From assembly GCF_902713615.1 (NCBI RefSeq), contig NC_052163.1:84431721-84495720 (forward strand): a DNA stretch of 64,000 nt. The letters are read 5' to 3'. The position numbers were made by a program, and so were the translations under genes. Under the pieces are notes generated by a model. The model saw only the letters and a list, made by a program, of their open reading frames with translations. It was not told where the DNA came from and made no database searches. Shown here piece after piece: positions 37,929 to 40,069 of this stretch. Positions within the stretch are counted from its first letter, which is position 1. Every line of letters begins with the position of its first letter. The DNA is from Scyliorhinus canicula. Taxonomy: Eukaryota.

Positions 37929-38192
37929 ATGCCCCTTACTGCTCTACCACTTCCTTGGGCAAAAACAACTACAGTTATTACGATGACTCCTTCTAGCTGG
38001 TCTTCTATGACGAAGAGGAGAATTTTTTACCAGCAGCGGCTGCTGGCCGCGAGTGAGGACATCTGTAAGAAGTTCGAGCTACTGTCCACCCCTCCCCAGT
38101 CCCCAGGTCGGAGACCCAGCTTCAGCCTGCTGCCCAGCTTCTACCCATCCAACACCGACCAGCTGGAGATGGTCACCGAGTTCCTGGGCGAC
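37929..38192 (+). pseudogene. MYC: c-MYC exon-2 5' fragment (N-terminus through Myc box I), decayed
   Basis: Starts MPL. An alternative frame reads [24 protein letters not shown], then [30 protein letters not shown]...[14 protein letters not shown]-like sequence. This matches c-Myc [55 protein letters not shown]. Homology stops before Myc box II; no bHLH exon is seen in the window. Confidence 0.9.
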
Positions 38193-40069
38193 AGGACACA
38201 CAATGCACTCCCTCCATGACCACATGGGGAATCAGAATCTTGAGCATAGAATACAATCATTTGGCTCAATGCAACCGTGCCAAATTGTGAAAGTCCCATT
38301 CACTTAGTTCCAAGACTTGTCATCACCTAACCTTTTATATATTTATTTTGCAAGTAATTATTCACTTCCCTTTTAAAAATCTTTTCCATTCCATTTCCAC
38401 CACTGTTGCTGGTTAGATATTCTATCTCCCAACCATTCTCCACATAATAAAAATTCACCTATCCTCTCCTTTCATTCCTTAAATGATTTAAAATTCATTC
38501 ACTCTAGTTACTATCTCCCGCATTTAGGAATAATTTGATCCAAATCACCTGAACAAAAGTTCCCAAATTTCAACGCCGGTATTATGTCTCTTAACCCAGG
38601 TTTGTCCAACAGACGCATTAGGGCCAGAATCCGGCCCACTAACGCTTTCTACGCAGCCTGCCAACCATTGTTTCTAATACACATAAGATCAAGTAAGTGG
38701 AAGTGACCGATTCTGTGAAGAGCTGCTCCTCCAATCATGGGCTAGTTCTCTTCCACATTTGCTGGTGGTGAGCGGCAAACATAGGAGAGAAGCAGTCTCT
38801 GATTGGAAGAGCATCAAGCAATGGGAAAGTTTGTATCAGCATTCTGCCTCAGGCCTGAGAATTGGTACAGTATCAGGACAGGAGAGGTAGTGAGGAAATT
38901 ACTTCAGGGGAGAAGGCAACAAGGATGCGGCTCCCAGGAGGAAGAGGCAGTGAAGGAGCAGCGAAAGGGGAGGGAGAGACAGTGGGAGGGATGGGAATAG
39001 GAGTGACCCAGTGAGCAACCAGATATGGGATGGGGGGGAAGAGGTGATGAGGGAGTGGTTACAAGGTGAAGGAGAGAAGGTGAGGGAGGAGTATTGAGAA
39101 AGGCAGTGAGAAAGATGGTGGGAGAGGGGTAACGGGAGGGTGAGGGAGTGGCTAGGGGAGGGAGAGGCAGTGTGGGAACACCTGCAGGAGGGTGACAGAT
39201 GTTGATTGAGTGGATACAGGGTGGGATGAGGCAATGAGGGAGTGACTTCAGGGGGAGCAAGAGGAGACAAGGGAACAGCTTCAGTGAGGGGATAGTGATG
39301 TCACTGGACGAGTATCTGGAAGCCTAGGCTAATTCTTTGGGGACACAAATTGAAATCCCACTATGGTGTCAGGAAAATTCAAAAAGTTGTAATATTTTAC
39401 TGTTCGTAATACTGATAAACTCTTGGCGTTTGTGAGTATTAAAGCCAGGGACAGACCATCTCTGTGAATTTTACCTGTGGGTTTGATATGGTAATGAGCC
39501 TAGCAATACTTTAAGCAAATGTTTTCCTAAGGTAATATAATAAGGATCGTTTCAGTGCAGGAATAGATTTGGGTGGGTGGTGGTGATTCAAAGGAGAAGA
39601 TTTGAAAATGTGAAAGAAGGGTGTCACAGATAAAGTGTGGATAGAGTGAGTTTACTTCTCTTTTAAAATCTAAAATCTAAAGTAAAGAGATTATGTTAAT
39701 CAATTCTGAGAGAGAACAATTCTAAAGCAACTGGGTGAAACAATAGAGAGATCAAAGGGAAAGAACATATTTAAGGTGATACTGAAACCAATGAACGGAG
39801 CTGTTTTAGATCTCAGCAGACAGCAGGAATTGCTGGGCAAGGTCCCAGCAAGTAATGCGGATGGAGCTAGATCTGAAAAGCCGACTGCTGTTAAGCTCAG
39901 AAGGCACCCAAACAAAATTTAAAGACACTGGATGGTAAAAGTTACCAAACTCTTATAGATCTTAAAATCTATAAAGTGTTATTAGCTCTGAAGATCGTTA
40001 AATTTAGATTATTTGGAACTGTGTTAAAGTATTGGTACTGTGTGAAGCCATTGTCTTCTACTTTATTTT

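What the first reader, a model, noticed from the sequence alone, without database searches (positions are those of the whole stretch)
37929..38219. A c-MYC exon-2 fragment sits about 2.6 kb from the leader of an immunoglobulin light-chain cluster
Seen: sequence matching the c-Myc N-terminus and Myc box I ([18 protein letters not shown]; [11 protein letters not shown]), with a stop and frameshifts in the Myc frame. It ends abruptly before Myc box II, and no exon 3 is visible in the window. It lies ~2.1 kb from the inverted V relic and ~2.6 kb from the Ig leader, separated by unique DNA and an RTE fragment. It is preceded by TTTCCAATTCCAG, which resembles a splice acceptor and hints at a genomic rather than retrocopy origin. 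Known: MYC-IgL juxtaposition is the hallmark of variant Burkitt translocations, and shark Ig clusters undergo RAG activity in the germline. Inference: this could be a germline-fixed MYC piece captured at an Ig locus, a segment co-duplicated with the cluster, or the relic of a lost myc paralog. A chance pseudogene insertion is also possible.
Basis: partly seen in the sequence, partly recalled or inferred. Interest (0 to 1): 0.8.

Follow-up and report, generated by a model that had tools for sequence, protein, structure and literature searches.

The report
Dead Myc fragment beside antibody genes
A short, long-dead copy of the start of the Myc growth-control gene lies 2.6 kb from a shark antibody light-chain gene; it is real, single-copy and was copied from genomic DNA, but nothing ties it to the antibody locus, so it is an ordinary gene relic in an eye-catching place.

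Summary
Window 37929-38195 (+) is the first ~88 codons of a shark c-Myc-type exon 2, through Myc box I (Pfam Myc_N, E 3.4e-14). It is 78-83% identical in protein to shark Myc.

It is dead. It carries a net -1 frameshift, a one-codon deletion, an in-frame TAG, a +1 T insertion and about 15 replacements, four of them in the otherwise invariant box I. Myc box II, exon 3 and bHLH-LZ are absent from the whole window.

Contigs from runs filed under three studies of the same species match it without a mismatch, and so does one from a second species. One contig bridges both edges. Depth equals single copy, whereas the neighbouring IgL leader region also attracts a multi-copy paralogous contig. So the fragment was not co-duplicated with the clusters.

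The ~110 nt upstream share colinear blocks with intron 1 of a skate Myc gene (0 of 1089 and 3 of 3182 control tiles reach this) and none with the mRNA's exon 1. This favours a DNA-level partial copy over a retrocopy.

No RSS-like signal, target-site duplication or further Myc-locus DNA flanks it.

Best reading: an old non-processed Myc pseudogene fragment whose position near the Ig cluster is incidental. The scan has noted it only on this same stretch, not on other DNA.

The parts
37817..37928 (+). Remnant of the 3' part of Myc intron 1 (plus any few nt of exon-2 leader). It contains a 6-nt tandem duplication just before the ATG.
   Evidence: Colinear exact blocks of 7, 8 and 12 nt are shared with skate Myc intron 1 at similar distances from the ATG (-112/-93, -104/-87, -78/-72). 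The 27-nt chain is reached by 0 of 1089 control tiles of L003 and 3 of 3182 window tiles. There is no similarity to the exon 1 of the skate mRNA.
37929..38195 (+). Decayed 5' part of Myc exon 2: start codon to just past Myc box I (about codons 1-88). Lesions: net -1 frameshift at about 37944-37957, one-codon deletion, TAG at 37994-37996, +1 T in 38023-38028.
   Evidence: Pfam Myc_N E 3.4e-14; phmmer hits to Myc; 79% nt identity to skate exon 2; 78-83% aa identity to shark Myc and a shared PSFY insertion; contigs with 0 mismatches in 4 runs.
36930..37770 (-). 5'-truncated LINE ORF2 C-terminal fragment, high copy in the genome. Its 5' end points at the Myc fragment.
   Evidence: The minus-strand translation shows LINE ORF2 tail motifs broken by stops and frameshifts. 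Contig depth is in the hundreds to thousands, against about 4 for single-copy DNA. Boundaries are approximate and the family was not determined.
38196..38700 (.). Single-copy, non-Myc DNA that abuts the 3' edge of the fragment.
   Evidence: Depth is 2-4 in X1. There is no similarity to the rest of the skate Myc locus beyond background and no Myc hit by tblastn.
32545..35475 (-). Neighbouring Ig light-chain V-J-C cluster, given as context and not part of the fragment. C exon about 32545-32871, J about 34479-34514, V exon about 34885-35206, leader 35311-35359, octamer 35468-35475.
   Evidence: V-set and C1-set by Pfam. RSS at 34884 (-, 12 spacer) and 34515 (+, 23 spacer). Leader, J and octamer positions are my reading of the sequence.

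Best explanation
This is an old, non-functional, non-processed pseudogene fragment. About 0.4 kb of genomic DNA spanning the intron 1/exon 2 boundary of the shark's c-Myc-type gene was copied into intergenic DNA. The copy was either a short templated insertion or the trimmed remainder of a larger duplicate. It has since drifted without constraint. It does nothing now. Its position 2.6 kb upstream of, and divergent from, an Ig light-chain cluster is incidental. What is shown: Myc identity, the disabling lesions, single copy, presence in several samples, and similarity of the upstream flank to Myc intron 1. What is inferred: the copying mechanism, the age (order 10^8 years) and the lack of function.
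For: Myc_N match and closest hits. Stop, two frameshifts and a codon deletion. Nine replacements in the 55 clean codons, four of them inside the box I core, including W to C and a change at the residue that aligns with human S64. That core is identical in all nine cartilaginous-fish Myc proteins. CpG o/e is 0.51, like its flanks, against 0.79 in the functional skate exon. Six of 15 skate CpGs read TG or CA here. The rest of Myc is absent from 64 kb. Depth is single copy, with perfect contigs in three runs of organism A that are filed under three studies, plus one run of organism B. One contig bridges both junctions. The upstream flank shares a colinear 27-nt chain with skate Myc intron 1, with an empirical frequency of about 1e-3, and shares nothing with mRNA exon 1. 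The PSFY insertion shared with lamniform and carcharhiniform Myc places the source in the extant gene. No RSS-like signal lies at the edges, while the true V and J RSS are found by the same scan.
Against: The species' own Myc locus could not be read: NCBI shark loci came back without DNA. The intron argument therefore rests on a distant skate and on a statistic I designed after seeing the blocks. Ordinary alignment scores of the same flank are not significant. Part of the bin 37776-37959 is high depth, so some of the AT-rich flank may be repeat or low-complexity DNA. The tool is said to leave out human-like contigs, which may be why, so the copy count could miss diverged copies. The two frameshifts compensate and leave a 96-codon ORF from the ancestral ATG, so coding is not formally excluded. 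One run of unknown library type covers the promoter-to-fragment interval better than expected.
Confidence: 0.7

Rival explanations
1. Processed or semi-processed retrocopy. A Myc transcript, possibly started inside intron 1 or unspliced, was reverse-transcribed and inserted. Later deletions removed everything 3' of codon 88.
For: LINE activity is abundant in the window. The fragment ends before the exon 2/3 junction, so absence of intron 2 cannot be tested. By ordinary alignment scores the intron similarity is weak.
Against: LINE-made retrocopies normally keep the 3' end and lose the 5' end, which is the opposite of what is seen (general knowledge). There is no poly(A), no exon 3 anywhere in the window and no target-site duplication. 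The upstream flank shows no similarity to the exon 1 of the skate mRNA but does show colinear blocks with the intron.
Confidence: 0.1
2. Co-mobilisation with the adjacent LINE. A truncated LINE lying antisense in intron 1 of the real Myc gene was retrotransposed on a read-through transcript. It carried the intron end and the antisense start of exon 2 as a 5' transduction, and reverse transcription stopped at 38195.
For: The LINE is on the minus strand with its 5' end about 160 nt from the Myc ATG, and the intron-like DNA lies between them. This would explain both the abrupt 3' edge of the Myc piece and the intron content.
Against: No target-site duplication flanks about 36930 and 38195. The LINE copy is itself 5'-truncated. 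TE fragments are so dense here that adjacency is expected by chance. The model is untested because the parent locus is unavailable.
Confidence: 0.08
3. Ig-locus-linked capture. A germline double-strand break made by RAG (or AID) near the light-chain cluster was repaired with a patch of Myc DNA. This would be a germline echo of somatic MYC-Ig joins.
For: Germline RAG activity at shark Ig clusters is documented (PMC2193156, listed; abstract only read). An inverted V relic at 35600-35800 shows local rearrangement (sequence; scan note s1-268266). The arrangement is head-to-head, with the Myc break in intron 1.
Against: Neither edge of the fragment has an RSS-like heptamer/nonamer, although the scan recovers the true V and J RSS. 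The edges are 2.1-2.6 kb from any Ig sequence, and unique DNA and a LINE lie between. Only about 88 codons were copied. No second example lies beside the paralogous clusters.
Confidence: 0.05
4. A functional remnant. The 96-codon ORF, or a divergent transcript from the light-chain promoter that runs through it, has a role, for example as a box-I-containing decoy peptide in the manner of rodent B-Myc.
For: The compensating frameshifts leave an ORF from the ancestral ATG through box I. Run X8 covers 35534-38168 better than its genome-wide share predicts, with depth falling away from the promoter.
Against: Invariant box I residues are replaced, and 22 of the 96 codons are read out of the Myc frame. 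About 17 RNA-like runs hold none of its words. No similar ORF product exists among 5.8 billion proteins. X8's library type is unknown, and its depth at the fragment is about 4, like that of its other unique contigs in this stretch.
Confidence: 0.03

Closest known systems
Non-processed (duplicated) pseudogene fragments of vertebrate genomes
   Same: It is a partial copy of a single exon with adjoining intron DNA. It is single copy, lacks the rest of the gene, and carries frameshifts, a stop and unconstrained replacements.
   Different: The source is Myc and the landing site is next to an Ig light-chain cluster. The copying event and its breakpoints cannot be reconstructed here.
Rodent B-Myc (Mycb), a truncated Myc relative resembling c-Myc exon 2 (from my own knowledge, not checked here)
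   Same: It is a stand-alone copy limited to the N-terminal part of c-Myc that contains Myc box I, without bHLH-LZ.
   Different: As I recall, B-Myc is intact, expressed, and about 170 residues long with box II. This copy has about 88 codons, a stop, frameshifts and mutated box I residues, and no evidence of expression.
Somatic MYC-immunoglobulin juxtapositions of Burkitt lymphoma (from my own knowledge)
   Same: Myc sequence and an Ig light-chain gene lie within a few kb of each other, head-to-head, with the Myc break upstream of exon 2.
   Different: Those are somatic, keep coding exons 2 and 3 intact, and join Myc to Ig sequence so that Ig enhancers drive it. This one is found in several samples of the species and in a second species (so most likely germline), is truncated and dead, and does not join Ig sequence directly.
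Functional shark c-Myc-type gene (e.g. Mustelus asterias XP_078072877.1, Scyliorhinus canicula XP_038666093.1)
   Same: 78-83% amino-acid identity over the first about 88 residues, including the lineage-specific PSFY insertion.
   Different: The functional proteins are nearly identical to each other over this stretch, while the fragment differs at about 15 positions and is broken.

Membership tests
Myc family (Pfam Myc_N, PF01056) | N-terminal region with Myc box I | tested here: met
   Myc_N E 3.4e-14, profile positions 38-83. Box I is recognisable but has four replacements. Box I and box II positions are from PMC3401448.
Myc family (functional member) | Myc box II, bHLH and leucine zipper, and an intact reading frame | tested here: not met
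   Homology ends at residue about 88. tblastn with eight full-length Myc proteins finds nothing else in the 64 kb. A stop and two frameshifts are present.
Non-processed pseudogene fragment | Flanking intron DNA of the parent gene is retained | tested here: met
   A colinear 27-nt chain is shared with skate Myc intron 1 (0 of 1089 and 3 of 3182 controls). This is weak by ordinary alignment scores, and the species' own intron was not available.
Non-processed pseudogene fragment | Disabling mutations and relaxed constraint | tested here: met
   
Processed pseudogene (retrocopy) | Spliced exon junctions, a poly(A) tail and target-site duplications | tested here: not met
   There is no poly(A), no exon 3 and no TSD. 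The upstream flank is unlike mRNA exon 1. The exon 2/3 junction itself is not testable because the copy ends before it.
TE-borne captured gene fragment (Pack-type, Helitron, LINE transduction family) | Multiple dispersed copies carried by the element | tested here: not met
   Depth at 37960-38327 equals one single-copy contig in each of four runs at 80% likeness.
MYC-Ig juxtaposition of the Burkitt type | Intact Myc coding exons joined directly to Ig locus sequence (J, switch or RSS-associated breakpoints) | tested here: not met
   Only about 88 broken codons are present. The edges are 2.1-2.6 kb from Ig sequence and have no RSS-like signal.
Segment co-duplicated with Ig light-chain clusters | The same fragment beside paralogous clusters | tested here: not met
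   The leader region 35203-35506 attracts a paralogous contig at depth 14.7 with 7 differences, but the Myc bins show only the locus's own contig. The limit of this test is contigs of low-coverage runs.

The most novel reading that the evidence does not exclude
A patch of genomic Myc DNA (intron 1/exon 2) was used as filler when a germline break near a shark Ig light-chain cluster was repaired. It now sits in the path of divergent transcription from the light-chain promoter. This would be a fixed germline counterpart of the somatic MYC-Ig joins known from B-cell tumours.
Probability: 0.05. Interest if true: 0.6.

Novelty: new member of a known kind. Interest (0 to 1): 0.2.

Why it matters
It matters little for biology. 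It adds one dated example of a partial, DNA-level gene copy in a slowly evolving shark genome, and it removes a tempting but unsupported link between Myc and an Ig locus. Two side products may be useful. First, short blocks in the 3' part of Myc intron 1 appear conserved between a skate and a shark, which makes them candidates for a regulatory element. Second, the fragment preserves older states of the Myc N-terminus and could serve as a neutral marker for dating this Ig cluster's neighbourhood. If the low-probability capture reading were true, it would be direct evidence that germline breaks at shark Ig clusters pick up foreign DNA.

Tried and rejected
1. I searched the 96-residue ORF product against 5.8 billion proteins for other copies and found no hit.

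2. I tried to fetch the genomic Myc locus of close sharks (Chiloscyllium, two S. torazame assemblies). No DNA was served, and a Carcharodon look-up was not sent. Only a skate locus, L003, could be read.

3. Ordinary local and anchored global alignments of the upstream flank against skate intron 1 and against skate mRNA were not significant for either.

4. tblastn of the N-terminal extensions of shark and skate gene models against the flank gave a 5-of-9 match to the S. torazame model at E 1.6. That is suggestive only.

5. I looked for more Myc-locus homology left of the LINE and right of 38195. It was at background level. BLAST of skate mRNA and contig against the window found only the fragment.

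6. I looked for target-site duplications around the fragment and around LINE plus fragment. There were none of 7 nt or more in a meaningful position.

7. The RSS scan found nothing at the edges.

8. The RNA index search listed no holder on record as RNA.

9. The parent Myc exon did not appear in read laying at 80% likeness, so divergence from the parent could not be measured directly.

10. The literature search found no report of a shark Myc pseudogene or a Myc-Ig neighbourhood.

11. I rejected the ancient lost paralog idea because of the shared PSFY insertion. I rejected misassembly at fragment scale because of the bridging contig.

Full report
**1. Is it there?**

Yes. From the ATG at 37929 the plus strand reads the start of Myc. 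After nine codons the Myc frame shifts by -1. In the shifted frame the NY/DY repeat and the acidic DEEENF motif follow, interrupted by TAG at 37994-37996. One extra T in the run 38023-38028 then returns the reading to the first frame. There it continues cleanly through Myc box I to the [10 protein letters not shown] motif, ending at 38195.

- The clean 58-residue piece scores Pfam Myc_N at E 3.4e-14.
- An exhaustive phmmer search of 1.84 billion representatives returns Myc proteins. The best is a skate exon-2 product at 83% identity.
- Nucleotide identity to skate exon 2 is 79%, and it stops abruptly after GGCGAC.
- tblastn with eight Myc proteins finds no box II, exon 3 or bHLH-LZ anywhere in the 64 kb.

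Box I and box II positions follow PMC3401448.

**2. Context**

The minus strand carries a light-chain type V-J-C cluster:
- a C1-set exon at about 32545-32871 and a V-set exon at about 34885-35206;
- a perfect heptamer with 12-spacer at V and a 23-spacer RSS at J;
- by my reading, a leader with its ATG at 35359 and an octamer at 35468-35475.

The Myc ATG is 2570 nt from the leader ATG and points away from it. Between them lie a decayed inverted V relic (scan note s1-268266; visible), about 1 kb of unique DNA, and a 5'-truncated LINE ORF2 tail on the minus strand at about 36930-37770. I did not determine the LINE family.

**3. Is it assembled correctly, and how many copies are there?**

Index look-ups find the stretch in at least five samples from four studies of organism A, and partly in organism B. 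I laid the contigs of four runs on 35200-40700 at 80% likeness.
- A 450-nt contig of X1 covers 37848-38297 with no mismatch and bridges both edges of the Myc piece.
- X8, X11 and X10 (organism B) each give a perfect contig inside the fragment.
- Depth over 37960-38327 equals one single-copy contig in every run (about 4).
- The LINE region runs to hundreds or thousands.
- The leader region 35203-35506 also attracts a paralogous contig at depth 14.7 with seven differences.

So paralogous clusters exist, but the Myc piece is not repeated beside them.

One caveat applies. The species' own functional Myc exon did not appear either. The tool is said to withhold human-like contigs, which may be the reason. 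The test is therefore reliable for close copies of the fragment but not for diverged ones.

**4. Which Myc, and how old?**

The nearest proteins are the c-Myc-type genes of cartilaginous fishes. Identity over the first about 88 residues is:

| Species | Identity |
|---|---|
| Mustelus | 83% |
| Cetorhinus | 81% |
| Carcharodon | 80% |
| Scyliorhinus (two species) | 78-79% |
| Chiloscyllium | 79% |

(All.)

- The fragment carries the four-residue PSFY insertion. Lamniform and carcharhiniform Myc have it, whereas Chiloscyllium, skate, ray and chimaera Myc lack it.
- The fragment therefore derives from the extant gene after that insertion arose, not from an ancient lost paralog.
- The functional proteins are almost identical to each other over this stretch, while the fragment has about 15 replacements.
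- Four of those lie in the box I core, which is identical in all nine cartilaginous-fish proteins. They include W to C and a change at the residue that aligns with human S64.
- CpG o/e has fallen to 0.51, like the flanks, against 0.79 in the skate exon.
- About 16 replacements over roughly 196 non-synonymous sites imply about 8% neutral divergence on the pseudogene branch. Given slow shark substitution rates, I infer an age of the order of 10^8 years. This is inference only.
- Earlier notes of this scan call the genome catshark-like (not tested by me). If that is right, the fragment keeps F and N where both Scyliorhinus Myc proteins have L and S, which again points to an old copy.

**5. DNA copy or retrocopy?**

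A skate mRNA contig (L002) mapped on the Amblyraja genomic locus (L003) gives this structure:
- exon 1 at 9198-9517;
- intron 1 at 9518-9992;
- exon 2 starting 7-8 nt before the ATG.

The CCAG that abuts the ATG in the window is therefore not at the position of the skate acceptor. By itself it proves nothing, and it lies in a 6-nt tandem duplication.

Further upstream, however, the window shares three colinear exact blocks with the skate intron at similar distances from the ATG:

| Block length | Distance from ATG (window / skate) |
|---|---|
| 7 nt | -112 / -93 |
| 8 nt | -104 / -87 |
| 12 nt | -78 / -72 |

With homopolymers masked, this 27-nt chain is reached by none of 1089 control tiles of the skate locus and by 3 of 3182 tiles of the window. 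The same flank shows no similarity to the mRNA's exon 1.

I designed this statistic after seeing the blocks, and ordinary alignment scores are not significant. I therefore treat it as moderate evidence that about 110 nt of intron 1 came along. A weaker hint comes from the in-frame translation of the flank. It resembles the residues that two S. torazame gene models place before the Myc start (5 of 9, E 1.6).

**6. What bounds it?**

- Left of the LINE and right of 38195 there is no Myc-locus similarity above background.
- No target-site duplication flanks the fragment alone or the fragment plus the LINE.
- No poly(A) is present.
- No RSS-like signal lies at either edge.

The copied segment as it survives is about 380 nt. 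The evidence does not tell me whether it was inserted as a short patch or is what remains of a longer duplicate after deletion and LINE insertion.

**7. Function**

I found none.
- The two frameshifts compensate, so a 96-codon ORF runs from the ancestral ATG.
- However, 22 of its codons are out of the Myc frame and the conserved residues have drifted.
- No similar product exists in the protein collection.
- About 17 RNA-like runs hold none of its words.
- Run X8, whose library type is not on record, covers 35534-38168 better than its genome-wide share would predict. Its depth falls from about 60 near the promoter to about 4 at the fragment. If X8 is RNA, this would be a divergent upstream transcript reaching the fragment at trace level. 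This is unresolved.

**8. Verdict**

The object is a single-copy, long-dead, most likely non-processed Myc pseudogene fragment. Its closeness to an Ig light-chain cluster has no sequence-level support as anything but chance. It resembles Burkitt-type joins only superficially, since, as I recall them, those keep Myc exons 2-3 intact and join Ig sequence directly. I found no publication on it. The scan's own index holds only this same stretch.

Noticed in passing
window 35159-35161 (minus strand, V exon): The V exon of the neighbouring light-chain cluster has an in-frame TGA early in framework 1, at a position where I would expect a glycine codon. Its RSS, J and C look intact. The cluster's V may therefore be a pseudogene in this assembly, or the site may be polymorphic.
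   Followed up: partly
window 35534-36487: In runs X8 and X11 (library type unknown or guessed RNA), contig depth just upstream of the light-chain promoter, including the inverted V relic, is 40-100. The same runs' other unique contigs in this stretch sit at about 4. The DNA run X1 shows about 3 or nothing here. This could be a divergent promoter-upstream transcript or an open-chromatin peak.
   Followed up: no
window 37817-37861 and L003 about 9908-9940: Short blocks in the 3' part of Myc intron 1 appear conserved between a skate gene and this shark pseudogene, at matching distances from the start codon. They are candidates for a conserved intronic element of Myc.
   Followed up: partly
window 37929-38219: The -1 and +1 frameshifts compensate and step around the TAG, leaving a 96-codon ORF from the ancestral ATG (110 codons from an upstream TTG). 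I judge this to be chance, but I did not test it against orthologues.
   Followed up: partly
window 37997-38168: A contig of organism B is identical to the window over 165 nt and then has 38 letters that do not fit after 38161. Contigs of X11 and X8 also stop at 38162-38168. There may be an indel or structural difference at this point between individuals or species.
   Followed up: no
window 37917-37928: A 6-nt tandem duplication lies directly before the ATG. A contig of X8 stops fitting at 37927 with 9 unaligned letters, so the duplication may be polymorphic.
   Followed up: no
window 38246-38600: By eye, the DNA starting about 50 nt after the Myc edge resembles a very decayed copy of a repeat I recall as abundant in shark genomes. 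Its depth is single copy and self-BLAST finds no relative in the window, so this is unverified.
   Followed up: partly
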